IMG/VR virus record: IMGVR_UViG_3300029908_000004
Span: 124,001-188,000 of that record
Length of the DNA stretch: 64,000 nt
Strand: one strand, 5' to 3'
Of the stretch, positions 10,220 through 43,039 are shown piece by piece (position 1 is the first letter of the stretch; each line of letters starts with the position of its first letter). Under the pieces are notes generated by a model that worked only from the letters and a program-made list of their open reading frames with translations, ran no database searches and had not been told where the DNA came from. The translations under genes were made by a program, and so were the position numbers.

Positions 10220-11098
10220 ATGTCAATGAGCTTTCTAAAACTGTCACCCGCCGGTCGTCGTTACGGGCGTTATCCTGATAACCCGTTTTCCCCAGCTAAA
10301 ACACTACTTAAAATAACAGCTCCATCTAATTTAGTATTACCACCAACTGCTACTACTTCTCAATGGATGGGCCCAATTCGTGATCAAGCACAAGAGGGTT
10401 CCTGCACGGGGCAATTGAAAGCTGAATACCGTGATTGGATGTACCGTAAGTTGTATATGTTTGAGAAAGATAAAACAATAGCTACAGCGGACTTTATGTC
10501 TTCAGCAGCTTTTGCTTATCAGACAAACCTTGCGGCTGATGGTGATATTGGACAGGATGCGGGATCAACAATCCACACAACGTTTAAAACTTTAAATAAG
10601 TTTGGTGTATGTCTAGCTCCACAAGAACCATATCTTGGAACAGATTATATGTCTGCCCCTACTCAACAAGAATATGCTGAAGCTCTTATCTATAAAGGAG
10701 GACCATATCATTCATTACCAACATTAACAGATGTTAAATTCTCAATTTCTTCTGGCTATGCCGTTGGTATAGGAATTAATGTGTATTCTTCTTTTGAAGA
10801 AACCCAAATACAGACTACTGGGTTTATGCCAATGCCGGCACCTGGCGAGAGTTTATTAGGTGGTCATGCACAACTAGTTTTAGACTATAATGACACAATT
10901 GCTTTCCCAGATGAAACCACTGGTGGTGTATTTATCCAGAATTCATGGGGCAGTTCATGGGGTATTTCAGCACAAGGCCGCACTGACGGCGGTTGTTATT
11001 GGATGCCTTATGCTTTCTTTAATTATCAAGACCCAAGTGGTAATGGATCGGGAGTCTCTGATATGTGGATGATGCATGAGGGCTCAATTTGGCAGTAA
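10220..11098 (+). CDS. Papain-family (C1A) cysteine peptidase
   Basis: RDQAQEGSCTG (Q56, C62), GGHA (H216) and IQNSWG (N241): a complete catalytic set. Confidence 0.88.
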   Translation: MSMSFLKLSPAGRRYGRYPDNPFSPAKTLLKITAPSNLVLPPTATTSQWMGPIRDQAQEGSCTGQLKAEYRDWMYRKLYMFEKDKTIATADFMSSAAFAYQTNLAADGDIGQDAGSTIHTTFKTLNKFGVCLAPQEPYLGTDYMSAPTQQEYAEALIYKGGPYHSLPTLTDVKFSISSGYAVGIGINVYSSFEETQIQTTGFMPMPAPGESLLGGHAQLVLDYNDTIAFPDETTGGVFIQNSWGSSWGISAQGRTDGGCYWMPYAFFNYQDPSGNGSGVSDMWMMHEGSIWQ

Positions 11099-25242: not shown

Positions 25243-25292
25243 ATTATGGACGCAAAATATAGCGAGAGTAAATAAGATAAAGGAGATCTCCG

Positions 25293-25781: not shown

Positions 25782-25833
25782 AAATTATACTTGACTTCGA
25801 TTCATTAGGGTCTATGAAATAAGGAATAAGGAT

Positions 25834-25855
25834 GGTGGGTGTCTCAACACCCACC
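25834..25855. repeat. 9-bp intergenic hairpin
   Basis: GGTGGGTGT-CTCA-ACACCCACC. Confidence 0.65.
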
Positions 25856-25867
25856 TAATTACATACA

Positions 25868-26389
25868 ATGATTATTTATCAAGCGACATGGCCTGACGGC
25901 TATACTGTCAAGTGGCGCAACCTAACTTGGGCAGAATATCGTAGAATAGAACCATCATACCTAGGAGCCTCTTCTAGGTTTTCTTATCCTATGGGGGCTT
26001 ATTTAGATGTATACAAACTAGTGATGCTAGATGGGCCACTCCCACAATTTGTGCCAGCGGGAATAGTAGCATACGTTGCTATACAACAGCTAAGTACTAA
26101 CCCATTCAATGGTACCTATGATGATATAAAAGGTCAATTATATTTATCTAGACAGAGATTAGAATCTAGTTATCTAGAAACAGCGAAGTGCTTGATAGCT
26201 GCAGCATTTAAATATAGATTCGAAGAAATGGAAGATTGGGATCCAATAACTTTCTTTGATATGTTAGCAAGAGCAGAGAAGGTATTGGGCCGGCTAGCAG
26301 AACCAAATAACCCTAATGAAGTTAAAGCCCCATCAATTCCAGAAGATGTTAAAAGAGAAGCATTACATAGAAATAGAAGGAAAAAGTAA
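25868..26389 (+). CDS. Putative tail assembly chaperone 2
   Basis: 173 aa; stop overlaps the ATG of the giant gene (TAATG). Confidence 0.5.
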   Translation: MIIYQATWPDGYTVKWRNLTWAEYRRIEPSYLGASSRFSYPMGAYLDVYKLVMLDGPLPQFVPAGIVAYVAIQQLSTNPFNGTYDDIKGQLYLSRQRLESSYLETAKCLIAAAFKYRFEEMEDWDPITFFDMLARAEKVLGRLAEPNNPNEVKAPSIPEDVKREALHRNRRKK

Positions 26390-29300
26390 TGGCAAAAGCA
26401 CGGAAGCCTAAGAAGAATATGTTTATCCTAGATATTGAAACCTCCCACACTAATTGGGAAGAGCTCAATCGTCTAGAAGGAAAGTTTTCTATCAGAGGGA
26501 TCTTCGAAGCTTCCAAAGAAGGTGCTTACGGCACTTCAGCTTTTTCTACTGCCTTTGTTAATAACCAAATCCTTCAGATGCATATTGAAGAATCTAAGGC
26601 ATATAGGAAATTTTCTGCTGATGGATCTAAGGTATATAAGAAAGGTTCTGGTTATACAAAACTATTCCTAGATAAGAATCATATCCTACCTTATAGAGAT
26701 ATCGTTAAGAATGTTGAATTTCCTATATTCTTAGACAAGTTTTCTAATGACATTGCAGCAGATGCTTTAAAGTACGCCACTCTTACAGAGGAGCAACAGC
26801 TAAGAAGACTCTTCCAAGCTGTGCAAGGAAAATCTATAAAAGCTGGTGGTCCTATTCAGCTTGCTGGATGGAATGTAAAATATGACATTGCTTCTCTTAA
26901 AGCCTCTGCAGCTAGATACTCCTCTCTAAATAAATATGTAGAATTCTTTGATAAAGCCTATGCTACTAATAAGATACAGTTTGTAAGCTTAGAAGACGAG
27001 TTGTTTAAACAAGTATGGACGCATGCTTCGCAGAATCCTGACTTAATGCGTCATCTTACAGATAAGGCTCGTGCCAGAACATTTGATCTTACATTAGAAC
27101 TTAAGAGTTCTGAAGATTTAAAGAACGTTCCGGGTTGGAAAGCTTCTAAGATAGCTAGAATGCTAGGTCTTGGAGAAGAACTTCATCGTGCAGCCGCAGA
27201 TGTAGCATTAGAGAGAATGATATACGAGGCTGTAATTACAAACGGTCTGACTCTAGAGCACATCAAAGCGATGTATGGTGCTTGGAGAACCGAAGCATCT
27301 TCTATAAAAGAAGTAACAGAAGTTATCGGTGACATAAGACCACTAAATGGGTTTGCTTTACTAGCAGGAGCCGCCGCTGCAATAGCAGCGGGCTTAGCAT
27401 TCAGTACCAGATCCTCTAGACAGACTACTATTGTTGGTTTATCAGATAATGGTAAAGCCAAGGATTCCAGACACAAACACACCTCGTTTGGTTCTGGATG
27501 GCACGGACTAGGAGAAGATAATAGTAGCTTAAATTATAAAGCTCTTGGCGCAGCTGGCTTTGCTGCAGCAGGGTATTCCTATTTCCGTAAGGTTATCGTT
27601 CCAGGAAAAGGACCTTTCTCTGTAGATAAACTACACAGCTTTGTAAGTACATTAGAAGATTACAGCCCATTTAAAATTGGTAGAACTTTTGGTATTAGTC
27701 AATACATAAGTTCTTATACTACTCCTAGTAAATTACACGTTGGTTATAGTGAATTAGTAGGACAGGGTGGTAAATATACTGAGTTAGGTGAACATTTTGA
27801 TCGCCTATTTACTGGTTCTAATGTAGATTTACGTTCCCAAAAAGGGTTGAATTTTATAAGGACTGATTATGGTCCTTATATGGAACTTGAGGGATACGGA
27901 GGAGACGTCCGTGCCCGTTTTACAAAGCGTGGAAGTCTATCTAGTTCTAGTTATAGATACAACAAACCTCTTGAAAATGTTCCTGTAACTTTCCTAAAAG
28001 AGAGTACTCCTTGGGAAACTATTACAAAGAACTTTGGTCGCCTTCGTCATTCACAAGAACCAACTGGTTATAAAGGTGCTATCAGTGTTGGCGAAGAAGT
28101 AGAAGGTGTCTTCCAACCATATCTAGTTAATATAAAGAGTAGAGGCAAATTATTTAATTTCGCCGAAACTGCTAATAGAACAGCTCTTAGTCAAGCCGAA
28201 CGTGTACAGAGATTATTATCTGATATAGGGTTAGGATTAAAAGAAGGTACGTGGAATAAAGCTTTTCACGTCCCTATAATAGGTGAGGGTGGTTTAGTTA
28301 ACCAGCTTCTTACTAAGAGATTCGCTCCAGCAGCTCTATTAGTTGGATTAGCCCTTCCTTACATAGATTATAAAACTGGCCATTCTTTAAGCGGTATAGC
28401 ATTAGATACGTTCCAGCGCTTTAGATTAGCCCATGCTTCCCTTACTGATCATTTTCTGCGTGGTGTAACAGATAAATATGAACAGATTGTACCCGGTCCA
28501 CAGTACGGTCCATTAGCCTTACCAGTATCTGGAGCCTTTGTTGGTGGGGTACTTCAATACTCTAATGTATTAAGAACTAGATACACAAAGGGAGAAAAAG
28601 CAGCAGAGTTACTTCGTTCAGGAAGTAAATTCTTCTCCGCCCCCGGACAAAAGTCAATCTTAGGTATCCTAAACCGTGAGAATAAGGGTGCTGTTGGTGT
28701 AGCTATTGGACTAGCGCTAATGCTTCCCTTCATTCCGGGGATGATTGGGTCTAGGAAAACAAAGGAAGAACTACAACGGACATACTCTGGTGAGGATCCA
28801 GTAGAAATAAAAGCTGGTCGCTGGTGGGATATGGGAACCACAGCGTTAGAAGGTGGTCGTGTAAAGGAGTATCGCCCACACTGGTCTGTTCTATGGCGCG
28901 CACAAGCAGAGAAGAAGGCTTTATATGGATCAGAGAAAGAGTACTGGAGACATAACCCGATACTTCATCCATTACGCTGGTTAAGAGATCCTTATTTCCT
29001 AGAAGAAAAGCATTATGAGGATAGGCCATACCCAGAGACTTCACCTGCGTTTACTAATGTTCCATTAGTAGGACCACTATTAGCTTCTACTATTGGTCAA
29101 ATTGTAAAACCAATCAGGAAGATGCATCCAGAGTGGGATACAACTGACTATACATTAGGGTCAACTCGTCTAGAACCGAGAGGTCCTAAAGCATTACCAG
29201 CAGCAGAACCAACATCAGAATTCTCTTTAGGTGACACAGCTCAAAGATCAATTAAAGCTGCTACTGAATTCGTTGGATTGCCGGGCTTTATCGGGCGTAG

Positions 29301-31365
29301 CTTATGGAATAAAACTTTCCCTGGATATGGATCTATGGGTGAGAATGTAAAGTTCCAAGGTTCCCGACAAATGACTAATTATAGTCGTAAATACTACGAG
29401 CTAGAACTAGGTGCTGTATCTGGTGTAAGTCCTGACTTTGAATTATTTGGATATTCTGAACCTTTCCGTCGTTTCGTACAGAACGAAGGAAAGTTACTTC
29501 AGGCTAATAGTATTAAGAATAAAATGCCTTCTTGGCTTCCTGGAGAGGATTATTTTATTAACTTCAGAACAGGTGACCCTTATGTAAAGATTTCAACTGG
29601 ATTCGCTCGTCTGCCGGGTGAGGGTTATGCAGCTCTACACCCAGAACTAGAAGGTGTCAGTCCAGAGGATTACCCAGATATGGAGAAATTACGTATCTTA
29701 GGGGATGTAGCACCATATTCTAGAGAGTTTGCTATCTTCAAAGGAAAGGTTAGGAAGGACATCAGAGGAGATACAGAAAGTTTAGCTGAGTATGAGAGTA
29801 TTATGGCTCGCGCTAATAAGATGCGCAAATCAGTTATTCGGACAGAGGAGCAGAGGTTCTCAAAGGATGTAGAAGAAACCACTGGAACAGTAAAAGCTCT
29901 AGGCTCAGCTGGTGTAGAGTTAAATGAATATCCGGGTCGTATATTTAGAATGAGCGGCGTTTCTACTACTGCTGCAGATATGTCTGCCGTTGTATTATCA
30001 CAATATAATGATATGACGAAGGAGGATGCTGCTAAGGAAATAGATGTAAGAAGAGCTGAGCTAGATAAATTCTTATCAGATACTTTCACTGCTGGCACAA
30101 AAGTAACGGCTACTTTCCAGAAAGGGGCTTTAGATAAAGAAACTAATATACGATCTGTATTAGAAATAGATGGATTAAACATCAATAAAGCTATAGTTGG
30201 TGAGGGTTACGGTACCTACGATAAAGCTTCTGCTGGGGCTGAATGGCAAGCTATGTTCAATCCAGCAGAAAGATTACTAGGAAGGTACGCAGAAGAAGCC
30301 TCATTCGCTGAAGAAGCACCTTGGTGGAACCCCCTTAGATGGTTACCTACACCTTATCATACCAAGCTGTGGCAAGAACGTTCAGCGCTAGCTCAGTACG
30401 TAGATCAAGAAACTGTCGGAACTCGTATGCGTAGGTGGGATAAGCCGATTAAAGACTTCTTGGCTCCGTATTACCATGGGCTATTACATAGGGTAAGCGG
30501 AGAAGTATTTATTCCAGAGGCAACAGTAGAAAAGCGGAATTTAAATACTATGGTAGATATGTTAGATTATCTACGAGATTTGAATTTAGCTTCTACCGAC
30601 TCTGAGAGTCGTGGCAGGTATACTAGTAAGGCTAGTAGGACAGCTATAGGTGCAAATCTTACTGGGTCCACCACTTTCCTAGGCTCCACACTGCCTGATC
30701 GTGATACTAGATACTTCAAAGAATTTGTAAATTCTACTGACGATGAGGAAAGACAGAAGATACTAGATGTGGTGCCAGATGAAATGGCTAGAGCTTTAGA
30801 AGCTCAGTGGGCTGGTAAAGAGGCACAGATAGCAGAGTCTGAAGGCAAGGAGACTAATATACAGTTCTCTGGTGGTCGCCTTGTGAATAAAGAAGGTCTT
30901 GATCGTTTCAAGAAAGCAACAACAAAGCTCGATTATGGTGATTATGAAAGGTCCTTAGAGATATCTGATTTCTTCGCGAAGACTGGATTATCAGTTCCTG
31001 AATCAGATTCAGCGTTATGGGACCCAAACATTGATTATGAAGACGTAAAGCTAAAGATTATAGAGATGGAAGGTCGTGATTACCATGACTTCAATATATT
31101 TGATGATAGAGCTTCATTACTTTGGCGTAAACCTTATGTAGATGGTGCAGTACAAGAGTTAACGTCTGGAAACGATCGTTCGGAAGAACAGATTAGAAGA
31201 CAAGTTGAGCGACTTATGCTAGCAGCTAAGAATCCTAATGCTAACCCTTTCACTAGTGGTCACCCATCTCAAGATAGTAGGGGTAGCGCTACCATTAATG
31301 TAAACGTGGATCAGACTGAAGAGTTGCTAAAAGATATGCGACGTAATCCGGAGAATTATGATTAG
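26389..31365 (+). CDS. Giant tape-measure-position protein with an N-terminal DEDDh 3'-5' exonuclease and a possible degenerate SNase-like domain
   Basis: ExoI ILDIET (D15, E17), ExoII AGWNVKYDI (D166) and ExoIII HRAAAD (H266, D271). Several G/A-rich hydrophobic segments follow. IFRMSGVST...LEIDGLNINKAIVGEGYG resembles a thermonuclease fold. It follows the tail chaperones. Confidence 0.7.
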   Translation: MAKARKPKKNMFILDIETSHTNWEELNRLEGKFSIRGIFEASKEGAYGTSAFSTAFVNNQILQMHIEESKAYRKFSADGSKVYKKGSGYTKLFLDKNHILPYRDIVKNVEFPIFLDKFSNDIAADALKYATLTEEQQLRRLFQAVQGKSIKAGGPIQLAGWNVKYDIASLKASAARYSSLNKYVEFFDKAYATNKIQFVSLEDELFKQVWTHASQNPDLMRHLTDKARARTFDLTLELKSSEDLKNVPGWKASKIARMLGLGEELHRAAADVALERMIYEAVITNGLTLEHIKAMYGAWRTEASSIKEVTEVIGDIRPLNGFALLAGAAAAIAAGLAFSTRSSRQTTIVGLSDNGKAKDSRHKHTSFGSGWHGLGEDNSSLNYKALGAAGFAAAGYSYFRKVIVPGKGPFSVDKLHSFVSTLEDYSPFKIGRTFGISQYISSYTTPSKLHVGYSELVGQGGKYTELGEHFDRLFTGSNVDLRSQKGLNFIRTDYGPYMELEGYGGDVRARFTKRGSLSSSSYRYNKPLENVPVTFLKESTPWETITKNFGRLRHSQEPTGYKGAISVGEEVEGVFQPYLVNIKSRGKLFNFAETANRTALSQAERVQRLLSDIGLGLKEGTWNKAFHVPIIGEGGLVNQLLTKRFAPAALLVGLALPYIDYKTGHSLSGIALDTFQRFRLAHASLTDHFLRGVTDKYEQIVPGPQYGPLALPVSGAFVGGVLQYSNVLRTRYTKGEKAAELLRSGSKFFSAPGQKSILGILNRENKGAVGVAIGLALMLPFIPGMIGSRKTKEELQRTYSGEDPVEIKAGRWWDMGTTALEGGRVKEYRPHWSVLWRAQAEKKALYGSEKEYWRHNPILHPLRWLRDPYFLEEKHYEDRPYPETSPAFTNVPLVGPLLASTIGQIVKPIRKMHPEWDTTDYTLGSTRLEPRGPKALPAAEPTSEFSLGDTAQRSIKAATEFVGLPGFIGRSLWNKTFPGYGSMGENVKFQGSRQMTNYSRKYYELELGAVSGVSPDFELFGYSEPFRRFVQNEGKLLQANSIKNKMPSWLPGEDYFINFRTGDPYVKISTGFARLPGEGYAALHPELEGVSPEDYPDMEKLRILGDVAPYSREFAIFKGKVRKDIRGDTESLAEYESIMARANKMRKSVIRTEEQRFSKDVEETTGTVKALGSAGVELNEYPGRIFRMSGVSTTAADMSAVVLSQYNDMTKEDAAKEIDVRRAELDKFLSDTFTAGTKVTATFQKGALDKETNIRSVLEIDGLNINKAIVGEGYGTYDKASAGAEWQAMFNPAERLLGRYAEEASFAEEAPWWNPLRWLPTPYHTKLWQERSALAQYVDQETVGTRMRRWDKPIKDFLAPYYHGLLHRVSGEVFIPEATVEKRNLNTMVDMLDYLRDLNLASTDSESRGRYTSKASRTAIGANLTGSTTFLGSTLPDRDTRYFKEFVNSTDDEERQKILDVVPDEMARALEAQWAGKEAQIAESEGKETNIQFSGGRLVNKEGLDRFKKATTKLDYGDYERSLEISDFFAKTGLSVPESDSALWDPNIDYEDVKLKIIEMEGRDYHDFNIFDDRASLLWRKPYVDGAVQELTSGNDRSEEQIRRQVERLMLAAKNPNANPFTSGHPSQDSRGSATINVNVDQTEELLKDMRRNPENYD

Positions 31366-31379
31366 TCCCGGGAGGGTAA

Positions 31380-32444
31380 ATGAAACCAGCCAAAGCGGTA
31401 ACGCTGGATCCTGATCTACGATGTGGAGATGCTATCGAATTTGAGAACAATCTTCTAAAGAATGTAATTGGACAAGAAGACGCTATTAAGAAAGTAACTG
31501 AGGTAATTGGTACTTATATGGCCGGCTTACAAGCCCCCAACAAACCAATTGCTAATGTATTATTTCTAGGACCCACCGGCGTTGGAAAGACAAGATTGGT
31601 GGAAGTAGTAACAGAAGTTCTTCTAGATAGTGACTCGTCTTGTATTAAAATTAACTGTGCCGAGTTTCAGCAATCACACGATATCGCTAAACTCACTGGG
31701 TCTCCTCCCGGATATGTGGGACATAAAGAATCAATTCCATTTATAACTCAAGAACGATTAAATAAATGTCATACCAAAGATGTAAAGTTATCAGTTGTTT
31801 TATTCGATGAGCTTGAGAAAGCACACCAGTCTTTTAGAGAGCTTTTACTAGGAGTAATGGATAAAGGCATACTACGTATAAGTAGTGGAATAGACGTAGA
31901 TTTTACCAGTAGTATAATATTTATGACATCTAACGTAGGTGCTAGATCAATGAGAAATTTGATTAAACCTATGGGGTTTGATACTGGTAAGGAAGATACA
32001 AAGTTAGATATAAAGCTTTGTGATGTTGCTGTAAACGCCATGCGTAAGGACTTTTCACCAGAATTCATTAATCGTCTAGATAAAGTTATCGTTTTTAAGA
32101 GCCTAAAAGAAGAACAGATTAGACAGATTCTTCGCATAGAAGTAGATCATATACAGAGACGAATATTAAATTCTAATAATCTTCGGAAGTTTGTCATAAT
32201 CTTGGATAAACAGGCTGAAGACTACTTACTAGGATTAGGTATAAGCACAGAGTACGGCGCTAGAGAATTAAGACGAGTATTAGAAAAGAACATTGTGGTT
32301 CCTATTAGTAGTATGCTTCTTAGCTCACAGATTAATCTTGGTGATGTTGTAAGAGTTTCAGTTAGAAACGGTTCCCTATACTTTGATAAAATTCCTTGTG
32401 AAATAATAGATAAGCTACCAGAATGTCTTGAAATAGAGGCTTAG
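31380..32444 (+). CDS. Stand-alone Clp-family AAA+ ATPase (ClpA/B/C D2-like)
   Basis: VIGQEDAI, Walker A GPTGVGKT, pore loop GSPPGYVG, Walker B VVLFDELEKAH, sensor-1 MTSNVG, PEFINRLD and sensor-2 YGARELRR. Confidence 0.9.
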   Translation: MKPAKAVTLDPDLRCGDAIEFENNLLKNVIGQEDAIKKVTEVIGTYMAGLQAPNKPIANVLFLGPTGVGKTRLVEVVTEVLLDSDSSCIKINCAEFQQSHDIAKLTGSPPGYVGHKESIPFITQERLNKCHTKDVKLSVVLFDELEKAHQSFRELLLGVMDKGILRISSGIDVDFTSSIIFMTSNVGARSMRNLIKPMGFDTGKEDTKLDIKLCDVAVNAMRKDFSPEFINRLDKVIVFKSLKEEQIRQILRIEVDHIQRRILNSNNLRKFVIILDKQAEDYLLGLGISTEYGARELRRVLEKNIVVPISSMLLSSQINLGDVVRVSVRNGSLYFDKIPCEIIDKLPECLEIEA

Positions 32445-32846
32445 ATGGAAGAACAAATAATATCAGTTACCTCCACTGACAATGCTATAACTCATCTAAA
32501 ACGATTTCGCAAGAATTGGGATGGCCATAATTGCCCAGCCATCAAAATTAAGGCGATGAAAACGTTAGAAGTTATATTGAGAGATATAGAGGATAGTAAG
32601 TTAACATTTCCTAAAATACTCCCTCTACACGACGGGGGAGTTGGTTTAATGTGGGCTTCTCACACCAGAGATGTCGGATTAGAAATAGCCCCTAATGGTG
32701 CACTATCATTTGAGTTTAGCCTTAAAAAATATGACGTAACCGGTGAGTTATCTGGTGAAGAAACCTCAGTAGGAACTCTTTCTTGTACAGCAAGCGTGGA
32801 TTATGTCCTAGCTTGGTATTCTAGTGATAAAGCGGGTTCTGTTTAA
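32445..32846 (+). CDS. Hypothetical protein
   Basis: 133 aa abutting the ATPase stop codon; NWDGH...P...DGGVGLMW pattern; no function assigned. Confidence 0.6.
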   Translation: MEEQIISVTSTDNAITHLKRFRKNWDGHNCPAIKIKAMKTLEVILRDIEDSKLTFPKILPLHDGGVGLMWASHTRDVGLEIAPNGALSFEFSLKKYDVTGELSGEETSVGTLSCTASVDYVLAWYSSDKAGSV

Positions 32847-32852
32847 TTTCAT

Positions 32853-32898
32853 GGTGGCTTGAATCCTGTAATTACAGGCCCAGCCAAATTAAGCCACC
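32853..32898. repeat. Nested inverted repeats upstream of the RNAP-like gene
   Basis: Outer arms GGTGGCTTGA (32853-62) and TTAAGCCACC (32889-98) enclose the perfect palindrome CCTGTAATTACAGG (32865-78). Confidence 0.7.
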
Positions 32899-32913
32899 TA
32901 ATTTTGGATCGTA

Positions 32914-35900
32914 ATGACTATAATCAGTTCTACAGTACTGTCTGTTGCAAACTTAATAAAACGTCATCATGGCGTATTAGCAGCTTCTGCTATCGTCCCA
33001 TTCTTCTATGACAGCGAAGATCGTGGCTATTTCAGGACAGCGATGATTACTACCCCAATACTGTTCGCTGGGGCAGAGATGTTACCAAAGCTATTCAGCA
33101 CGGCTAAGACAGAAGCTGAGTCTGTTTTCCATGCTACTATGAGTACTGCTAAGAATCCTATATTTAATACAGCACATAATATTGTTGGTTCTGATTTATC
33201 TAAGCTTGCAGAGGATGGTACTGTTGGTATACGAACTGTTGAAGAAGCTCAAGCTAGATATTCTATGGGATTAGCAAAGGCTCGACCAATAGAAGACATA
33301 AATAACTTATACAGTAGAGCCACAGGTCTTCTTAAGGCAACTGATCAGAACAGAAGAATGATGTCACAAGCAGTTGTGTCTTCAGCACAGGATGCTATGA
33401 CGCCTTATGATTGGATTAGTACACCAAAAGTTCTAGAAGGGTTGCTTGATAAAGATAATAGAACCAACGTATCTATGTCAGACGACAAAATGTTAGAGAT
33501 TGCTGAGTTCTTCAAGGGCAGAGGAGATACCAGATTCCCAAGAAGATTACAAAGTAATATGGATAGAATAGAAGGGTTAGTAGATCAAGGTGCTTTTGTA
33601 CCAGCAGGGGCCACCTTCTTTCCACCAGATGTAGTCACTAACTTACAAGTTGGCTCGTGGTCAGAGGCTATTGAAGAGAAATTGAGTAATGCCGGAGCAG
33701 GTGGAGTTAGCAATATCCTAAAGAATAGGTCTAACCTTGATAAGTTAAACCTTCAGGTAAAATTAGTTTCTCAAGGAGTTATAGACGGCAGCACCGCTGA
33801 TGCTTCCTATATTGATTTTGTCAGAACAATGAAAGATGTAGAACAGAGTATACGTATACCTATTCCAGATGCTAATGGGGCTGTTCGTATTGGTCCATAC
33901 ATAGGAACAGCTCGCTCTGTTATGGATTATGATGGAAAGATATATCGTATTGATGAGTGGGTAGCTAAGATGGTTACCGAAGGTAATGACTATACTGAAA
34001 AACAATTGATGGGGGATATTAATCGTGCTGTATTCTTCACAGCTCACGACCCAGCAGATACAGAGGCGATATACTCTCAAGCTGGATCTAGATTTGGCAA
34101 GAATTTCGCCGGAGAAAATCAGGTTAGATTAAAATCACAAGCTGCTGTATTAACTTCTCTACCTAGATTCAAAATGGGTGATGAGGCTGTAAGCTTTGAA
34201 AAGTTAGACCCACTATTTCAGTCAGATTTCGAGAGGAAATTAATCAATAGTGGAACTGTGTCTATGATGGGGCCGGAGTCTGCTTGGGGTAATAGAGTTT
34301 ATCAATTGCGTAAGATGGAAGATTTTGCTATGGGCGGAGTGGCAGACGTAACAAAGCAGGATTGGAACTATCGTTCTCTATCTAAAGGTGTATCGTACGA
34401 ATTCGTACAGAATAAGAATGGACTAGATCTTAAACCAAAGGTCTCGACTACAGCTTATGAAGAGTTCCTTGGTACCAAGGAAGTACCAGAATTCAATATG
34501 AGACTTGCTGGTATTTCTCCTCAAGAGAAGACACTCCTTGGTGATTTTGGTATGTATAAGACTTGGGAGGAAGCACAAGCTTATAAGCCATTGTTTATAG
34601 AACGAGCTATGGAAATGAATATCTCTCCAGCAAAAGCTGAAAAAGCTTTTAATGACATAGAACATTTCTATAGAAGTAAGACAAAGCTTGATAAATTTGG
34701 TAAGCCCAAACTAGGGTATGGTGCTACTATATTCGAACAAATTGGTAGCCTTGGTGAGACCGATATCATCATATCAGACGCGCTAGCGAAGACTGGTAGA
34801 CTAAAGTATACGACCACTTATGAAGTAGATCAGATGCATTTCAATCCTGAGGATTGGGTTGGTAAAGATGTCGAAGATGATTTCAAATTTGGTACTAGAC
34901 AAAATAAAGTTGTGAGCCCTGATTCTGGTGGAAAGATACTTTCTACCAAGGCTGCAGATGAGTCTACTTATCATATAATAATGGAACATTATCAAGGTAT
35001 GGACGCAGCGAAACATGATACTTTCGGTGTAAAGGGAGAATTCCATACAGGTACCTATCAAGGTAATTTCCAGACTATGCTTTCAGCAATAAATGATTTC
35101 AGAAAAACAACAAGAACGGGAGATGTAATAGATAAATATACCGTTAACGGTATTGCTGATTGGACTTATGCTCAAAATAAGATGGACCCAATGTTGCTTC
35201 GTATGTCTATAGCAGAGGATACCCTACATAATATAAGTTCACGAAATAAAGCTGTTGGAGAAGAATTAATAAGTTCTGCTACAGAACAACTAGCTAAAGT
35301 TGGTGTAGACTATACTGATGGACAAATGATCTTCCAGCACGAGTTTATTCGTAAGCAATTTGCCTCTAGAGAAGCTAAGATCGCTAATATGGAGGAACTT
35401 AACAGCGTTATAGATAAGATTATGGCTGATGCTACAGCTTCTATAAGAAGCAAGAAGGGTCTTGGGTATAAAGTCTATCAAGGGTGGTATAATAAAACAG
35501 GTAGTGGTATAACAGATGACGTACAAGCAGGTAAGAGTCTTGAAGCTTATATGCTACGTAATGGTGTAAATGTAAACGTTAGAACTTGGGCTCATGCTAA
35601 TATTAATCTTCCAGAACATGCCACAGTAACTCATGATTACGATACTTTCTCAAACCTAGGGGATAAGAGAGTTATGGCTGCTGAGCTTCGGAATCGCCTA
35701 CAAACTGTTGGCGAAGGCGACCCAGAAATGAGTATGCTATACGGTCAATATCTTCAAGATAATGATTACACCAAACCTATGCGTGAAAGTGAAGATGTAG
35801 TAGTAGATTTAGATAAAGCTTTCTTAGGTAGCGCAAAGCTATCAAGACCTGAGGGGCGTCATGGAACTATATTTGATCCATCCGATTCAAGATATAAGGA

Positions 35901-37839
35901 AAACTTTAGAGTAAAATACCTAGACAAAGAGGGTAAACCACAGTTCATACCTGTCCCGGGGACTGATGCTTATATGTCTATAAGCCCAGAATATAATAAA
36001 GAGAAAGGCGTAGGTTACCAAACTCATGACTGGCAAAATCAATTACATAATATTTATAACGAGGAAAAAGCTGGTAATATCGAAGCTAGAGACGCGTTAA
36101 TAGAGGGTATTAAACGAAAAGGCGGTTCAACCCAAGGAATAATAGATGCTATTCACGATGACCTATTAACAGGGAAGAATAGTGCTTGGAGACCACGTAG
36201 CTATGATCCATTAGGTAGATCTGGATACATCACGACCCGTGGAGGAACCGCTGAACCTTTCATAGTAGGTATCTCCTCAGAAGAATTAAAAGCGCTACCC
36301 GCCAGTATACAACAAGGTATAGAAAAGCAAGGATTTGGCACTGCTTTACTCGGACGCCAGCCTTATGGAGATGCGGTTGCAGTTAAAGTAATAGAAGATA
36401 AACATTTAAAAGGAACCAAGTTCTTTAGTATCAATGAAATAGTTCGTATGTTAATAGGTGCTGATGATGACCTTGATCCAGCCAACCTACATTATTATGC
36501 TGCTGGTTCAACAGGTGAAGCAGAAGCTCTAAGGGTAATGGCACCCGGTGGTAGACAAGCTAGAAGAGTAGAAAACTTCCGTGCGTTAATGGGCTCAGCT
36601 GACGAAAGTGCCTCAGTAAGAAATCCGGTACAAAAAGACTTAGCTGAGAGACTAGCTAAGAAACTTGCGCTAATGTCTAATCTAGAAGCCGCTGTAGCTA
36701 ATAGGTCTGCAGCAGAGGCTACTGGTACGTTATCCCTTGCTTCTGGTAGAATGTTAGCTCACATAGAGAGATCTCCAGCATTTAAGAATAATGAGGTAGT
36801 GCGTGATTATTTAACAGATATAGCAAAAAGATTACGTCAAGCGCCTATTGATGCTCGTAAGACTCAGACTTTGTTCAATAAACAAATGGCTATGAATATA
36901 GCAAATGAAGTTAAGGAATCATTTAAACTTGGCACGAGTGGCGCTGAAGGTAGTATAAAACAAGGTGCTGAAATGTTAAGGCGGGCTGTATTAAAGGAAG
37001 GTATTCTAGTTCCAGTTGATTGGAATCCTGTAATGGGAAAGAGATTTAATATTCCACAACCCCTTCCTGAAGAAATAGCAAAAGGTGGTGGTAAAGTTAA
37101 TGCAGCTGCTAGATGGTTAGAAACGCCCGAAGGAATAACAGCCAGTGAAGACTTAATGAAAGGTGCCACTAGAGAAACTGAGAATTGGGTAGATATAACA
37201 AGTGGTGTTCTTACTGGTGGAAAGAAAGTTACTAGAGAGATATACAATAAGTTAGAAGCTAGTGTTCCACCAACATTCCGTAAAGCATTTATGGCTATGA
37301 GTAGCGCAGCCGATTTAGGAACTATCAATACAAAAGCTGCGGCTGGTGCTTCTATGAGATCTATCGCTTCAACTGTTACCGAACTCTTCCGTGGAGATTC
37401 AGGTAAAGTTCTTGGTGTAGGTTTAGCTATTGCTGCTGGGGCTGGTTTACTATTTAATAGACCTAGGAATCCAAAGCAATTAGCAACAGCTAAGATGTCT
37501 AGACCAAGTGGGCATAGACCGGAAGAACGTATAGGAACTGACGGAGCAATACCCGGAGAGCCAATTACGGGGTCTATGGCACCAACTAATCCTCCTAAAT
37601 CAGTTAGATATGTAGAAAAAGGAGTGAGAACTACAATGGTGGCTCCAATGAATAGAACCTCAAACGTAGAAGCTACGATTGTAACTGACAGTGCTAGACA
37701 AGGTGCTGACTATTCTAGAGCTGCTGCTATGATGTCTAGTAATGGTGATGTAAACGCCACGATTAATTATAAAGTAAATAATAAGTTAGGAAGTCTCAGA
37801 AATAGAGAACGCATCAGAGAGATAAGAGACGAACAATAA
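32914..37839 (+). CDS. Putative single-chain two-barrel (DPBB) DNA-dependent RNA polymerase in the tail module, likely virion-associated
   Basis: beta-like motifs: GETDIIISDAL (E615) and KHDTFGVKG (K700, K707). beta'-like motifs: LLTGKNSAWR..LGRSGYIT..IVGIS, LLGRQP, IGADDDLD (D1184, D1186, D1188), EAEALRVM and QAPIDARK. Hydrophobic segments occur at both termini. Confidence 0.78.
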   Translation: MTIISSTVLSVANLIKRHHGVLAASAIVPFFYDSEDRGYFRTAMITTPILFAGAEMLPKLFSTAKTEAESVFHATMSTAKNPIFNTAHNIVGSDLSKLAEDGTVGIRTVEEAQARYSMGLAKARPIEDINNLYSRATGLLKATDQNRRMMSQAVVSSAQDAMTPYDWISTPKVLEGLLDKDNRTNVSMSDDKMLEIAEFFKGRGDTRFPRRLQSNMDRIEGLVDQGAFVPAGATFFPPDVVTNLQVGSWSEAIEEKLSNAGAGGVSNILKNRSNLDKLNLQVKLVSQGVIDGSTADASYIDFVRTMKDVEQSIRIPIPDANGAVRIGPYIGTARSVMDYDGKIYRIDEWVAKMVTEGNDYTEKQLMGDINRAVFFTAHDPADTEAIYSQAGSRFGKNFAGENQVRLKSQAAVLTSLPRFKMGDEAVSFEKLDPLFQSDFERKLINSGTVSMMGPESAWGNRVYQLRKMEDFAMGGVADVTKQDWNYRSLSKGVSYEFVQNKNGLDLKPKVSTTAYEEFLGTKEVPEFNMRLAGISPQEKTLLGDFGMYKTWEEAQAYKPLFIERAMEMNISPAKAEKAFNDIEHFYRSKTKLDKFGKPKLGYGATIFEQIGSLGETDIIISDALAKTGRLKYTTTYEVDQMHFNPEDWVGKDVEDDFKFGTRQNKVVSPDSGGKILSTKAADESTYHIIMEHYQGMDAAKHDTFGVKGEFHTGTYQGNFQTMLSAINDFRKTTRTGDVIDKYTVNGIADWTYAQNKMDPMLLRMSIAEDTLHNISSRNKAVGEELISSATEQLAKVGVDYTDGQMIFQHEFIRKQFASREAKIANMEELNSVIDKIMADATASIRSKKGLGYKVYQGWYNKTGSGITDDVQAGKSLEAYMLRNGVNVNVRTWAHANINLPEHATVTHDYDTFSNLGDKRVMAAELRNRLQTVGEGDPEMSMLYGQYLQDNDYTKPMRESEDVVVDLDKAFLGSAKLSRPEGRHGTIFDPSDSRYKENFRVKYLDKEGKPQFIPVPGTDAYMSISPEYNKEKGVGYQTHDWQNQLHNIYNEEKAGNIEARDALIEGIKRKGGSTQGIIDAIHDDLLTGKNSAWRPRSYDPLGRSGYITTRGGTAEPFIVGISSEELKALPASIQQGIEKQGFGTALLGRQPYGDAVAVKVIEDKHLKGTKFFSINEIVRMLIGADDDLDPANLHYYAAGSTGEAEALRVMAPGGRQARRVENFRALMGSADESASVRNPVQKDLAERLAKKLALMSNLEAAVANRSAAEATGTLSLASGRMLAHIERSPAFKNNEVVRDYLTDIAKRLRQAPIDARKTQTLFNKQMAMNIANEVKESFKLGTSGAEGSIKQGAEMLRRAVLKEGILVPVDWNPVMGKRFNIPQPLPEEIAKGGGKVNAAARWLETPEGITASEDLMKGATRETENWVDITSGVLTGGKKVTREIYNKLEASVPPTFRKAFMAMSSAADLGTINTKAAAGASMRSIASTVTELFRGDSGKVLGVGLAIAAGAGLLFNRPRNPKQLATAKMSRPSGHRPEERIGTDGAIPGEPITGSMAPTNPPKSVRYVEKGVRTTMVAPMNRTSNVEATIVTDSARQGADYSRAAAMMSSNGDVNATINYKVNNKLGSLRNRERIREIRDEQ

Positions 37840-40800
37840 TGAGTATAACAATTAGTAACCCACAACTAGACGATCCAGAAAGTGGTTATTTTCGTATTGG
37901 AAATGTGATATTAAAGATTCCACCAGAGGATATTAATATCCATAAGACCTCTAATGTAGACGAACTTACTGCTTTAAGAGCTAAGTTCCCATACATAAAC
38001 GAAAGTGGATTCGCTCGTTGGGATGTGACGGTATCTTGGACAGCAGTATATGAGGAAAACCCTCAGAATTATTCTGATTCCCCAAGTTTCTCAGAGAATG
38101 ATGACCCACATTGGGCTCAATGGGAGGATGTACGCACCATTGTAGCTATGATGAAAGCTGCTCCATTTGTAGAAGTGGAGAATGATCTTGTACGTTCAGT
38201 TATTTCATCGAGGAATGACGAATCTTCATATTCAGGAATAGCTGTTACTGATAGTACTAAATATGTTCGTTTAGCTTTTGCTCTCCGTCAATTTAAGGTA
38301 TCAACTTCAGAGGATATAGTAGATGGATTAAAGTGTCAACTAGTTATGACATTATTTAATTATCTTCCATTTACCAAAGACTTCGCTTATGTAGGCACTG
38401 GTGGTTTGCCGGTAGACGCCACTCAATCAGATGCTTTTAAGAAGTATTTGAATGAATGGAAAGAAAATAATTTAGATGCTCCACAAGAAGGGGAATACAG
38501 CCCATGGCAGGAGCAAGACCCGGAAGATACGAGTTTTATTTGGCGGACTTATATGCCACAACCAGGGCTCCCTGTTGCTGCTCCAAGCGATTTAGATGTT
38601 GATGAATGGAAGTGTGACCATTTCACAGATGATATGACTTATAGATATAAGGAGAATAGATTACATCTAGATTCTTCAGATGGCTCAAGCTCTGAGGAAG
38701 GCTTATTTCCTACCAATCTCTCCGTTGTATTTGTAAATCAGTTTGCTCAATTACCATTAGCTAATTATCAATATCCTACATATCAACATATAGGCCCAGC
38801 AACTACCGTTATCTCTATGGGTATGGAATCTGATAGCGCTGAATCCCTAGGGGTAACTGGTTTAACTGGAATGATAAATGAGTTGAAGAAACAATTCTTA
38901 CAATTCCGTTCTTGGAAATCTGCTGCTAGTATTTATAATAGGCAGGCTATCCTAGTTCGTAATCAGTTCCTTAATATGCTAGGAGTATGGGGGCTTAACG
39001 TAGCAGAATTTGATGTATCTACTATACAGAATTCTGCTGGTAGATTATCTTGTACCCTCATGGCTAGACAATATGAAAACTACTATGAGTTATTAGATCC
39101 ATTTACTGTATATGGTAGTGACCATTATACACAACAATTGAGTAGTTATATTAGGTCCCCAGCCTTAACTGCTGGGCTAACTCAAGCTGAGCAATCAGGA
39201 ATGCAAAAGCTTGTAGCTTTTCGTAACGCTTGGAATGGCTACGACGATAAATATTTAGCGAATCTTTTATTATCTACAGACCCAACAACAGCGTCTACTT
39301 TAAAGACATTGCCTAGTATACCAATGCCTAGTGGGGTATCGTTGACCCCTACTGAGCAGGCTAATCTATTCTTAACACTTAAGGAAGAAAGCCCATTAAG
39401 TGCTACTGTAAGTAGGCTGCCCGGAACGGCTGGTTATGGTAGTACACCCTTCGATAGCAGTTATTGGCCTTGGTTAGCCGCTAAGAACAGCCCTGGATAC
39501 GTAATGTCTTATACAGACTATTGGGTGTTAACACGACTAAATACTTTGTCTAGTCAGAATGATCCAACTAGGTATCAAGCAGATTTAGCTATCCAACAGA
39601 AATATGACCCACAAGTAACCCAAGCCATGAAAGATCAGATATGGCAGAAGGCATTTGAACTATTGGCAGCAAATGACCGAGTAATGTCGAATAACTTGGA
39701 TCAAATAGCTCGTTCGAAATCTTTCAAAGACTCTCTTGATTCATCGACACAAGCACAAGGTTTATATAGTCCCGGGTCTGACCCATCTAATGGTAAACAT
39801 GGATGTTATAGGGACTTAGGGATTTATGATGGGGACCCGGCTGAATATTTCATTGATTATTCCAATGTGCTATTAACAACAGCTGCCCAGCAAATGGAAC
39901 AGAATTTATCTGTAATGTTAACTGGATTCAAAGCTTTTAATACAAAAAATCAGCAGGGTCAGGGAACAACAATACCAACTGATCTTTCAGATTTTGGTAT
40001 ACAAGAAGGTAATGTTTCTGGTATGCTCCTACGTTCTAATATACCAAAATATAGTATGAGGGGATGTTTCCCAACATTCAAATTATTTCTTATGGAGGAT
40101 AAGAACACTAGTATTTTCTATTGTTATGATAATTTCTATTCTTATGCCTCTGTAATTGATATGGAAATGATTAAGTATAGGGACAAGCCTGATACTGCTG
40201 TGATAAGAATTACAAACCTATCTGGTATGTTGTCATATAGATTATTCGATAACTCTGTACAAGGTAAGAGAGAATGGGAATTAAGCAATGATGTTAAGGT
40301 CCCTACTTCCCTTGACGGGTCACCAACGGTTAACCCAGGAGGTATGCCGGGTGCTGTAATGGCTGGTAGAATGGGCAATCATAACTATCAAGAGGGTCAA
40401 GGTAGTTTAAACTCCCCCGGAGAAACGTTCGTTACAAACCAACCTAAGGTGCCATTGCGGTATTACCCATTACAAACTGGATCAAAGATACAAGTACGTC
40501 TTGGTTATTCTAATAATCCAGACGGGTTATACCCAGTATTTGTTGGACAAGTCACACAAATAGATGAAGAAGACGGGATTATAACTCTTGTAGCTCAAAG
40601 CTATTTGACTGAGTTGGATACCTCTATGTCAGACGAAGTTAGCAGCGATGGTTTTTCTGTGCCCGGTCTTGTTGGTAACATAATTAATAGTGTTACTGAC
40701 GCTGCTATACGGCTAGTTAAATTCCAGCCAATGATGGCATTTCGTGATTTATGGGCGGGATTAACTTACGTTAGAGCTCCAGCTTACGGCGGATGGCTGA

Positions 40801-43034: not shown

Positions 43035-43039
43035 ATCTA

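What the first reader, a model, noticed from the sequence alone, without database searches (positions are those of the whole stretch)
31380..32444. Single-ring Clp ATPase with a ClpP-docking-like MGF loop between the two giant genes
Seen: only the D2 module is present (no N-domain, D1 or M-domain), and KPMGF (M198-F200, nt 31971-31979) follows sensor-1 MTSNVG. Established: ClpA, ClpC and ClpX carry an IGL/[LIVM]GF loop at this position to dock ClpP, whereas ClpB lacks it. Inference: the phage may redirect host ClpP to chosen substrates (defence proteins, scaffolds, processing of the giant proteins) or unfold the giants for packaging.
Basis: partly seen in the sequence, partly recalled or inferred. 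Interest (0 to 1): 0.6.

Follow-up and report, generated by a model that had tools for sequence, protein, structure and literature searches.

The report
Single-ring Clp unfoldase with ClpP loop
A jumbo phage carries, in the middle of its tail genes, an intact one-ring Clp protein-unfolding motor whose strictly conserved MGF loop sits where ClpC and ClpA dock the ClpP protease, so it probably feeds chosen proteins to the host's ClpP; binding itself has not been shown.

Summary
Window 31380-32444 (+) encodes a 354-aa protein made only of a Clp/Hsp100 D2 module (AAA_2 plus ClpB_D2-small), with every ATPase and pore motif intact. MGF is at residues 198-200 (nt 31971-31979).

MGF aligns with the ClpP-docking tripeptide of S. 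aureus ClpC and E. coli ClpA, where E. coli ClpB has no such motif. In the AF2 model it lies in a flexible loop between two helices. Across 121 homologues the motif is I/L/M in 115, G in 121 and F in 120, while the flanking loop residues vary.

The protein belongs to a distinct clade of D2-only proteins. I found no NCBIfam model and no paper for it. It occurs in Acidobacteriota and in a clade of jumbo myoviruses.

In six related phage contigs the gene keeps the same place: 0305phi8-36 gp145-like virion giant, clp, a 121-140-aa ORF, the positional tape-measure giant, then a lysin giant. Some relatives add a trypsin-like or papain-like protease. The phage has no ClpP.

A fold with E. coli ClpP gave only weak support: 0.58 against a best control of 0.00. 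The substrates are not known. This is a new variant of a known kind, of moderate to high interest.

The parts
31370..31376 (+). Shine-Dalgarno GGGAGGG, 3 nt before the ATG of the clp gene. The stop of giant-1 is at 31363-31365.
31380..32444 (+). Single-ring (D2-only) Clp/Hsp100 ATPase, 354 aa (P0001)
31569..31592 (+). Walker A GPTGVGKT (residues 64-71). G64, G67, G69 and K70 are invariant in the family alignment.
31710..31721 (+). Pore loop GYVG (residues 111-114). Y112 is invariant.
31761..31790 (+). Family-specific insertion NKCHTKDVKL (residues 128-137) before the Walker B strand. It is absent from the ClpA, ClpB and ClpC D2 domains.
31794..31811 (+). Walker B VVLFDE (residues 139-144). D143 and E144 are invariant.
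31926..31934 (+). Sensor-1 TSN (residues 183-185). S184 and N185 are invariant.
31965..31997 (+). Flexible loop KPMGFDTGKED (residues 196-206) between helices 188-195 and 207-224. Residues 198-200 have pLDDT below 50.
31971..31979 (+). MGF tripeptide (residues 198-200), aligned with (F)AGF of S. aureus ClpC and IGL of E. coli ClpA. The pattern hydrophobic-G-F holds in 121 of 121 homologues, with one GY.
32073..32075 (+). Arginine finger R232, invariant
32256..32264 (+). Sensor-2 GAR (residues 293-295). R295 is invariant.
32385..32441 (+). Acidic C-terminal tail DKIPCEIIDKLPECLEIEA, with low pLDDT. It is shared as K[IV]P.E....LP.. by the phage-clade members and differs in the bacterial members.
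32445..32846 (+). Co-conserved 133-aa ORF whose ATG abuts the clp stop codon. Orthologues of 121-140 aa lie one to two genes downstream of clp in every related phage contig. It is a candidate partner or adaptor of unknown fold class.
26389..31365 (+). Giant-1 (1658 aa). It is homologous to the virion structural protein gp145 of Bacillus phage 0305phi8-36 and 47-50% identical to orthologues in related contigs.
32914..37839 (+). Giant-2 (1641 aa). It occupies the position of the hypothetical tape measure ORF146 of 0305phi8-36. No family is assigned.
37839..43034 (+). Giant-3 (1731 aa) with a C-terminal SLT lytic transglycosylase. It occupies the position of the 0305phi8-36 ORF147 lysin.
10220..11098 (+). 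Papain-like (C1) cysteine peptidase, 292 aa. Its orthologue sits two to four genes downstream of clp in relatives L008 and L010.

Best explanation
**What it is.** The gene encodes a catalytically competent single-ring AAA+ unfoldase made only of a Clp/Hsp100 D2 module. It belongs to a distinct D2-only family found in Acidobacteriota and in a clade of jumbo myoviruses.

**How it most likely works (inferred).** By homology with ClpC, ClpA and ClpX, six copies form a ring. The ring grips a polypeptide with the GYVG pore-loop tyrosine and translocates it using ATP. The flexible hydrophobic-Gly-Phe loops on the ring's exit face dock into the hydrophobic clefts of a ClpP heptamer. Because the phage has no ClpP, the peptidase would be the host's, giving a phage-programmed ClpP protease.

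**Likely clients (inferred).** The gene is translationally linked to a co-conserved ~130-aa protein, a candidate adaptor. It is fixed between the gp145-like virion giant and the positional tape-measure giant. The clients are therefore most likely proteins of tail or giant-protein assembly, for example removal of chaperone, scaffold or pro-segments, or quality control of very long proteins.

**Shown here.** Domain architecture, intact motifs, loop position, loop conservation, synteny, and absence of a phage ClpP.

**Inferred.** Hexamer formation, ClpP binding, and the identity of the clients.
For: **Architecture and fold**
- Only AAA_2 plus ClpB_D2-small are found.
- The best solved relatives by sequence are ClpB NBD2 (3e-60) and ClpC D2 (2e-56).
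- Foldseek's top hits are ClpC chains from ClpC-ClpP complexes and ClpB NBD2, at E about 1e-31 and TMq 0.72-0.77.
- The AF2 model has pLDDT 91.6.

**Intact motor**
- Walker A K70, Walker B D143/E144, pore Y112, sensor-1 N185, R232 and R295 are invariant in 65 sequences.

**The loop**
- MAFFT places MGF under S. aureus ClpC (F)AGF and E. coli ClpA IGL. E. coli ClpB has ELDY there and a Terriglobia ClpB has DEGH.
- The NCBIfam ClpX model starts its match at residue 198, at profile position 264.
- MGF is the only stretch of three or more residues with pLDDT below 50, and it lies between helices 188-195 and 207-224.
- The motif is IGF 47, LGF 44, MGF 23, with G in 121/121 and F in 120/121, and variable flanks.
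- All seven members with confirmed phage context keep MGF or IGF.
- That LGF-type loops on the underside of ClpC dock in ClpP pockets, and that their presence or absence discriminates ClpC from ClpB, is stated in PMC10149685.

**ClpP availability**
- The phage genome has no ClpP.
- All five bacterial genomes tested that carry a D2-only gene have a canonical ClpP at E about 1e-80.

**Complex fold**
- Verdict: weak support. Score 0.58, best of three controls 0.00.
- The mark was reached by 51 of 78 solved complexes and 2 of 108 mismatched pairs. At 0.60 or under it was reached by only 5 of those 78 solved complexes and by all 4 mismatches that passed (of 180).
- The runs agree in at least 78% of contacts, and the partner's pLDDT is at least 72.

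**Link to tail assembly**
- The same gene order holds in L008, L009, L010, L018, L019 and the contig of P0002.
- The flanking giants are orthologous.
- Giant-1 is homologous to gp145 of 0305phi8-36, a virion protein verified by mass spectrometry. In that phage the next genes are the hypothetical tape measure and a lysin.
Against: - No binding was measured.
- The complex fold passed only weakly. It used E. coli ClpP rather than the unknown host's, and it may reflect the model's memory of solved ClpC/ClpX-ClpP complexes.
- No clpP gene lies next to the D2-only gene in 20 bacterial loci within about 6 kb, or in the bacterial contexts. Gene neighbourhood therefore gives no support.
- In relatives the gene is followed by a trypsin-like protease (L009, L010, L018) and/or a papain-like protease (L008, L010). 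A phage-encoded peptidase partner, or a ClpP-independent role, is therefore possible.
- The host is unknown, so the presence of ClpP in it is assumed.
- The protein has no N-domain, so how it recognises substrates is unexplained.
- The small ORF shows no clear resemblance to ClpS, MecA or SspB.
Confidence: 0.6

Rival explanations
1. It is a ClpP-independent unfoldase or assembly chaperone. The ring unfolds, threads or holds the giant tail proteins (gp145-like, tape-measure-like, lysin giant) during tail assembly. The hydrophobic-G-F loop docks on a phage partner instead of ClpP. That partner could be the adjacent trypsin-like or papain-like protease, the ~130-aa protein, or a tail assembly intermediate.
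For: - The position inside the tail block is invariant across at least six related phages.
- Trypsin_2 and/or Peptidase_C1 genes lie directly beside it in relatives. The papain-like orthologue is present in this phage at 10220-11098.
- No clpP neighbourhood appears anywhere.
- 0305phi8-36 has the same tail block without any Clp gene, so the gene is an add-on to tail assembly.
- Iyer et al. [quoted passage not shown]
Against: - The tripeptide is just as invariant in chromosomal bacterial members, which have no tail genes and no adjacent protease. This is best explained by a universal partner such as ClpP.
- To my knowledge (not searched here), no chymotrypsin-fold or papain-fold protease is known to accept IGF-type loops.
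- This phage lacks the trypsin-like gene altogether yet keeps MGF.
- The complex fold with ClpP scored 0.58 against 0.00 for controls (weak).
Confidence: 0.27
2. It is a ClpP decoy or blocker. The ring occupies the host ClpP docking clefts to displace ClpX, ClpA or ClpC. This would shut down host proteolysis of phage proteins rather than deliver substrates.
For: - It has a ClpP-type loop but no N-domain for substrate or adaptor binding.
- The phage encodes no ClpP of its own.
Against: - All ATPase motifs and the pore-loop tyrosine are invariant across the family. A passive blocker would not need them.
- Its fixed place in the late tail operon fits poorly with an early host-takeover role.
- The family also exists in bacteria.
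Confidence: 0.07
3. It is a gene fragment or decaying remnant of a double-ring ClpB or ClpC captured by the phage, and the MGF is a chance tripeptide.
For: Database annotators label homologues 'ClpB' or 'ClpA'. Short Clp hits have been dismissed as fragmentary genes in a survey (PMC10149685).
Against: - It is a complete ORF with its own strong Shine-Dalgarno, 14 nt after the previous stop.
- More than 7000 hits of similar length were found.
- The family is monophyletic, with SH-aLRT 100 on a branch of 1.67 changes per column separating it from the ClpA, ClpB and ClpC D2 domains.
- All catalytic residues and the tripeptide are invariant.
- It has family-specific insertions.
Confidence: 0.01

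Closest known systems
ClpC (S. aureus, B. subtilis, M. tuberculosis ClpC1), D2 ring
   Same: - The D2 fold matches: Foldseek's top hit is a ClpC chain of a ClpC-ClpP model at E 2e-31, and phmmer gives 2e-56.
- It has a GYVGH pore loop.
- The helix-loop-helix after sensor-1 has ClpC-like length, and a hydrophobic-G-F tripeptide sits at the same alignment position.
   Different: - It has no N-domain, no D1 ring and no M-domain, so the docking sites for MecA- or McsB-type adaptors are absent.
- It carries a 6-7-residue insertion before Walker B and an extra stretch in the small domain.
- It forms a separate clade.
ClpX
   Same: It shares the overall logic: a single AAA+ ring with an IGF-type loop that docks ClpP. 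The NCBIfam ClpX model aligns weakly from residue 198 onward.
   Different: - It is not homologous at subfamily level: 40 bits against a cut-off of 359, and a PDB ClpX E-value of only 5e-07.
- It has no zinc-binding N-domain.
- Its small domain is of the ClpB_D2-small type.
ClpB / Hsp104 NBD2, and human CLPB (Skd3)
   Same: ClpB NBD2 gives the highest sequence scores (T. thermophilus ClpB NBD2, 3e-60). Skd3 is also a single D2-type ring.
   Different: - ClpB lacks the ClpP loop: ELDY or DEGH at the aligned site (PMC10149685).
- Skd3 has ankyrin repeats and scores far lower (1e-30).
- No M-domain is present here, so the DnaK coupling typical of ClpB is not available.
Clp components already noted in jumbo phages (ClpP, ClpS, ClpA- or ClpX-like AAA+; phage G ClpXP)
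   Same: The general idea that large phages tap or supplement the Clp system is already published (PMC7824862; PMC12484599).
   Different: - Those are canonical ClpP, ClpS, ClpX or double-ring proteins. Examples are the 778-aa Clp protein of Sinorhizobium phage Phosso and the 813-aa protein of Staphylococcus phage SpP.
- They are not placed in the tail block.
- No record in the cultured-phage collection exceeds 38% identity to this protein.
Tail assembly block of Bacillus phage 0305phi8-36 (ORF139-147)
   Same: The gene order is the same: sheath, tube, tube paralogue, two small putative chaperones, gp145-like giant, tape-measure-position giant, lysin giant.
   Different: 0305phi8-36 has no Clp gene and no ~130-aa ORF between ORF145 and ORF146. 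The clp and small-ORF pair is an insertion specific to this uncultured clade.

Membership tests
Clp/Hsp100 AAA+ ATPases (D2-type module) | AAA_2 large domain plus ClpB_D2-small domain above the Pfam gathering scores | tested here: met
   AAA_2 scores 113.9 bits (cut-off 27) and ClpB_D2-small scores 57.2 bits (cut-off 21.9).
Clp/Hsp100 AAA+ ATPases (D2-type module) | Intact Walker A and B, sensor-1, arginine finger, sensor-2 and aromatic pore loop | tested here: met
   K70, D143/E144, N185, R232, R295 and Y112 are all present, and all are invariant in 65 homologues.
Clp/Hsp100 AAA+ ATPases (D2-type module) | Hexameric ring with ATP-dependent unfolding activity | not testable with these tools
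   Only a monomer model was made. This needs biochemistry or a large multimer fold.
ClpP-partner unfoldases (ClpA/ClpC/ClpE/ClpX functional class) | Hydrophobic-Gly-Phe/Leu tripeptide in a flexible loop after sensor-1 on the exit face | tested here: met
   MGF aligns to ClpC AGF and ClpA IGL. It lies in a loop with pLDDT below 50 between two helices. It is conserved in 121 of 121 homologues.
ClpP-partner unfoldases (ClpA/ClpC/ClpE/ClpX functional class) | Physical binding to and activation of ClpP | tested here: inconclusive
   Complex prediction gave weak support: score 0.58 against a best control of 0.00. At 0.60 or under the mark was reached by only 5 of 78 solved complexes and by all 4 of the mismatches that passed. 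E. coli ClpP was used because the host is unknown.
ClpB (TIGR03346) | Two AAA+ rings, an N-domain, a long M-domain coiled coil and no ClpP loop; score above the equivalog cut-off | tested here: not met
   It scores 249.9 bits against a cut-off of 1232.1 and matches only profile positions 557-852. No Clp_N or D1 is found. A ClpP-type loop is present.
ClpA / ClpC / ClpE (double-ring class I) | An N-domain plus D1 and D2 rings | tested here: not met
   The protein is 354 aa with D2 only. The ClpA model TIGR02639 scores 216 bits against a cut-off of 993. The ORF boundaries are fixed by the upstream stop and the Shine-Dalgarno.
ClpX (NF003745 / TIGR00382) | ClpX-type AAA+ module with a zinc-binding N-domain; score above the cut-off | tested here: not met
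   It scores 40.1 bits against a cut-off of 359.
Defence-system ATPases (Dodola DolB, PDC-M37B) | Full-length match and a defence-island context | tested here: not met
   Only the large AAA domain (residues 17-197) matches, at 64-97 bits. The gene sits in a phage tail operon.
D2-only hydrophobic-G-F family (unnamed; Acidobacteriota and jumbo phages) | About 340-430 aa; a single D2 module; the CAEFQ.(S/P)H motif; an insertion before Walker B; an invariant G-F loop; monophyly apart from the ClpA, ClpB and ClpC D2 domains | tested here: met
   See (SH-aLRT 100).

The most novel reading that the evidence does not exclude
A clade of jumbo phages has recruited a bacterial single-ring, D2-only Clp unfoldase into its tail operon. 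Together with a dedicated ~130-aa adaptor it harnesses host ClpP, or the neighbouring phage proteases, to carry out ATP-dependent unfolding and proteolytic maturation of giant tail proteins: the gp145-like protein, the tape measure and the tail lysin. This would be the first AAA+ protease step required for phage tail assembly. It would also define a new class of ClpP partner beside ClpX and ClpA/C/E.
Probability: 0.25. Interest if true: 0.78.

Novelty: new variant of a known kind. Interest (0 to 1): 0.6.

Why it matters
ClpP is known to work with ClpX (one ring) and with ClpA, ClpC and ClpE (two rings). A large, monophyletic family consisting only of a ClpB/ClpC-type D2 ring with an invariant ClpP-type loop would add a further class of ClpP partner.

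It has been overlooked because annotators label it 'ClpB', 'ClpA' or 'AAA family ATPase', and because short Clp hits tend to be taken for gene fragments.

In phages, its fixed position between a virion giant and the tape-measure-position gene points to an energy-dependent unfolding or proteolysis step in the assembly of very long tails. No such step is part of the textbook tail pathway.

It also gives a compact 354-aa unfoldase for testing how a ring without an N-domain selects substrates.

Tried and rejected
**Searches that found nothing useful**
- Phage ClpP: PF00574 has no six-frame match in the 215-kb genome. Trypsin_2 and Peptidase_C1 also gave no six-frame match. A divergent papain-like gene is nevertheless present at 10220-11098.
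- Nucleotide similarity of 30000-36000 to cultured phages: none.
- Identity of giant-1 and giant-2: no Pfam, PHROG or PDB sequence match, and no usable Atlas feature hit. Only tblastn against phages placed giant-1. The giants are not paralogues of one another.
- Promoter and terminator scan of 25000-44000: no more sites than in shuffled sequence.
- Literature: five full-text searches found nothing on D2-only Clp proteins or on Clp genes in tail operons. Two further searches failed on term syntax.

**Hypotheses tested and not supported**
- Is the 133-aa ORF a known Clp adaptor? It has no Pfam, PHROG or NCBIfam family.
  - Its AF2 model (pLDDT 84) has no Foldseek match at E <= 0.001.
  - The best VIA Z is 8.1 (TriTu immunity protein), which is within the range expected by chance. 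Type III secretion chaperones appear at Z 4.2-4.7. ClpS, MecA and SspB do not appear.
  - It is not similar to the 141-aa ORF upstream of the Terriglobia homologue.
- clpP next to the bacterial D2-only genes: none in 20 loci, nor.
- Defence-system membership: only partial AAA matches.

- Host identification: the sheath and giant-1 hit only distant phages of Bacillus, Acinetobacter and Moorella. The host remains unknown.
- The complex fold gave only weak support and is used as such. No interface was returned.
Full report
**1. The observation**

The window is part of a 215,291-bp IMG/VR virus record, a single contig that CheckV rates 100% complete. The ORF 31380-32444 (+) translates to 354 aa (P0001).

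It starts 14 nt after the TAG of the upstream 1658-aa gene and is preceded by GGGAGGG. The protein therefore cannot be the tail end of a longer Clp gene.

- Pfam finds only AAA_2 (55-235) and ClpB_D2-small (242-326).
- PHROGs matches it to positions 459-755 of a 764-position 'ATP-dependent protease' family.
- The NCBIfam ClpB, ClpA and ClpV models match only their last ~300 positions, far below their cut-offs.
- KPMGF is at residues 196-200 and MGF at nt 31971-31979, after sensor-1 TSN 183-185.

**2. Is MGF the ClpP-docking position?**

I took E. coli ClpA, ClpB, ClpX and ClpP from the annotated K-12 record. I took an 818-aa S. aureus ClpC from a contaminating Staphylococcus contig in the phage collection. 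I took a full-length ClpB from a Terriglobia locus.

In a MAFFT L-INS-i alignment of their D2 parts with nine family members, MGF falls under ClpC (F)AGF and ClpA IGL. E. coli ClpB has ELDY there and the Terriglobia ClpB has DEGH. The length of the segment from sensor-1 to the PEF motif is like that of ClpC.

The AF2 model, built on a 65-sequence alignment, has mean pLDDT 91.6 and pTM 0.88. Residues 198-200 are the only stretch of three or more residues below pLDDT 50. They lie in a coil between helices 188-195 and 207-224. This is the helix-loop-helix expected of a P-loop.

Foldseek's best hits are ClpC chains taken from ClpC-ClpP complexes and T. thermophilus ClpB NBD2.

That such loops dock into ClpP pockets, and that their presence separates ClpC from ClpB, is established knowledge restated in PMC10149685.

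**3. Conservation**

The word-index search returned more than 7000 hits of 330-430 aa with the same two domains. The best 120 were listed.

In a 121-sequence alignment the tripeptide is IGF 47, LGF 44, MGF 23, FGF 2, YGF 2, WGF 1, VGF 1 and LGY 1. G199 is present in 121 of 121 and F200 in 120 of 121. Positions 196-197 and 201-208 are highly variable.

The catalytic residues and the pore tyrosine are invariant. A conserved tripeptide inside a variable, disordered loop is the signature of a docking motif.

**4. What family is it?**

A quick maximum-likelihood tree used 70 family members, one viral-contig homologue and four canonical D2 domains. It separates the D2-only proteins from the ClpA, ClpB and ClpC D2 domains by a branch of 1.67 changes per column with SH-aLRT 100.

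Family hallmarks are:
- a 6-7-residue insertion before Walker B (NKCHTKDVKL here);
- a CAEFQ.(S/P)H motif;
- an extra stretch in the small domain.

A scan of one genome per prokaryotic species found the closest chromosomal members (41-49% identity from residue 1) in Acidobacteriota: Terriglobales, Acidobacteriaceae, Pyrinomonadaceae, Bryobacteraceae and Solibacteraceae. Members also occur in Candidatus Cybelea and Binatia. These are ORFs of 349-510 aa carrying the hydrophobic-G-F motif.

Five such genomes all carry a canonical ClpP. No clpP gene lies within about 6 kb of the D2-only gene.

No NCBIfam model covers the family, and I found no paper on it. A survey of Clp unfoldases set short Clp hits aside as probable fragments.

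**5. The phage context**

All genes of the window are on the + strand. PHROGs and Pfam place:
- a major head protein at 5101-6420;
- a papain-like peptidase at 10220-11098;
- the tail sheath at 19456-21525;
- a baseplate wedge protein at 44561-45766;
- an SLT lytic transglycosylase at the C-terminus of the 1731-aa protein.

Giant-1 (26389-31365) is homologous to gp145 of Bacillus phage 0305phi8-36, a virion protein verified by mass spectrometry.

In that phage the order is: sheath, tube, tube paralogue, gp142, two 'tail chaperonins', gp145, the hypothetical tape measure gp146, then the lysin-bearing gp147. There is no Clp gene.

The window has the same order, with clp and a 133-aa ORF inserted between the gp145 homologue and the gene in the tape-measure position.

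The insertion is stable. Six further contigs carry Clp homologues at 47-70% identity: L008, L009, L010, L018, L019 and the contig of P0002. All show giant, clp, a small 121-140-aa ORF, giant, then a lysin giant. The flanking genes are orthologous: giant-1 at 47-50%, giant-2 at 23-26% (only a short 38% match for L009) and giant-3 at 31-34%.

The small ORFs align with one another. In the window the small ORF's ATG directly abuts the clp TAG.

L009, L010 and L018 add a trypsin-like protease, directly after clp in L009 and L010 and one gene further on in L018. L008 and L010 add a papain-like protease. The orthologue of that papain-like protease in this phage lies in the head region at 10220-11098 (33% identity, 5e-50).

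The phage has no ClpP, no trypsin-like gene and only this one Clp ATPase.

**6. The binding test**

One job was allowed. I folded residues 15-340 with three copies of mature E. coli ClpP.

- The verdict was weak support: score 0.58 (runs 0.58, 0.57, 0.58), best of three controls 0.00.
- The mark was reached by 51 of 78 solved complexes and 2 of 108 mismatched pairs. At 0.60 or under it was reached by only 5 of those 78 solved complexes and by all 4 mismatches that passed (of 180).
- The runs agree in at least 78% of contacts, and the partner's pLDDT is at least 72.
- No interface was reported.

Because ClpC-ClpP and ClpX-ClpP complexes are solved, the pass may show likeness rather than binding. 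I count it as a small increment only.

**7. Mechanism and rivals**

*Best reading (0.6).* The protein is a single-ring unfoldase that docks the host ClpP through its MGF loops. It is probably directed by the co-conserved small protein and/or its clade-specific acidic C-terminal tail. It probably acts on proteins of the tail or giant-protein assembly line. Only the anatomy and its conservation are shown here. Ring formation, ClpP binding and the clients are inferred.

*Main rival (about 0.27).* The same motor works without ClpP, either as a chaperone or threader for the giants, or coupled to the neighbouring phage proteases. The argument against it is that the tripeptide is equally invariant in chromosomal bacterial members that have neither tails nor adjacent proteases.

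*ClpP-blocking decoy (about 0.07).* This is disfavoured by the invariant ATPase and pore residues.

*Gene fragment.* This is excluded.

**8. Comparison and novelty**

Functionally the protein would resemble ClpX: one ring with an IGF-type loop. By descent it is a ClpB/ClpC-type D2, and it fails the membership tests of ClpB, ClpA, ClpC and ClpX.

That jumbo phages encode ClpP, ClpS or ClpA/ClpX-like proteins is known (PMC7824862; phage G ClpXP, PMC12484599).

The cultured-phage Clp homologues that I inspected are double-ring proteins located elsewhere in their genomes. None in the cultured-phage collection exceeds 38% identity.

I rate this a new variant of a known kind, with interest about 0.6.

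**9. Limits**

- The host is unknown.

Noticed in passing
window 32445-32846 (+): The 133-aa ORF abuts the clp stop codon and is conserved as a 121-140-aa ORF in all related phage contigs. Its model has an alpha, five-strand sheet, alpha fold (pLDDT 84) with no clear structural match. Residues 14-91 match the C-terminal part of the PADLOC defence-candidate protein PDC-M32A (E 1e-9).
   Followed up: partly
window 10220-11098 (+); L008:11799-12647; L010:12815-13741: A papain-like (C1) cysteine peptidase lies in the head region of this phage (Pfam only 16.7 bits). It is 33% identical (5e-50) to the Peptidase_C1 gene that sits two to four genes after clp in relatives. The gene has moved between the head block and the tail block.
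   Followed up: partly
L009:11104-12024, L010:11089-11991, L018:9544-10299: A trypsin-like (Trypsin_2) serine protease of 251-306 aa lies next to clp in three related phages: directly after it in L009 and L010, and after the small ORF in L018. It is absent from this phage's genome.
   Followed up: partly
window 32385-32441 (residues 336-354 of the Clp protein): An acidic, low-confidence C-terminal tail (K[IV]P.E....LP.. followed by acidic and aromatic residues) is shared by the phage-clade members but not by the bacterial ones. It may be a docking peptide.
   Followed up: no
window 26389-27500 (giant-1 N-terminus): Giant-1 carries about 370-400 N-terminal residues that have no counterpart in the 1302-1320-aa orthologues of L008, L009, L018 and L019, whose alignments start at residues 371-409. 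The 1501-aa orthologue on P0002's contig carries DUF559/MTES_1575 endonuclease-like domains.
   Followed up: no
window 22871-23920 (+): A 349-aa protein hits the PHROG 'major head protein' (phrog_9206). By position, however, it corresponds to the tail-tube paralogue of 0305phi8-36, which carries the same misleading product name in GenBank.
   Followed up: partly
window 11799-16490 (+): There is a fourth giant ORF of 1563 aa. It is rich in Thr and Ser (13% and 12.5%) and has three fibronectin type III stretches. It lies in the head-proximal region.
   Followed up: no
genome G000:C1 24058-65367 (outside the window): ARAGORN finds 30 tRNA genes, all on the minus strand, spread over about 41 kb. 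The genome GC content is 41%.
   Followed up: no
L004:7551-7976, and L025, L028, L032, L033: In several Acidobacteriota and Candidatus Cybelea genomes the D2-only gene is preceded by a conserved ~141-aa ORF (41-44% identity among them). It has no Pfam family and is unrelated to the phage small ORF. In Terriglobia the neighbourhood also holds full-length ClpB and an Hsp20.
   Followed up: partly
L002:9980-10993 (and the related viral contig L003): Two smaller viral contigs (33 and 48 kb) carry a 43%-identical match (a 337-aa D2-only ORF in L002). In the tree it groups with bacterial-type members. Two genes downstream lies an 817-aa protein with weak 'internal virion protein / head closure' PHROG hits.
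   Followed up: partly
window 60001-64000: GC content rises to 0.47, against about 0.39-0.43 elsewhere, over the open-ended ORF of at least 978 aa that starts at 61067.
   Followed up: no
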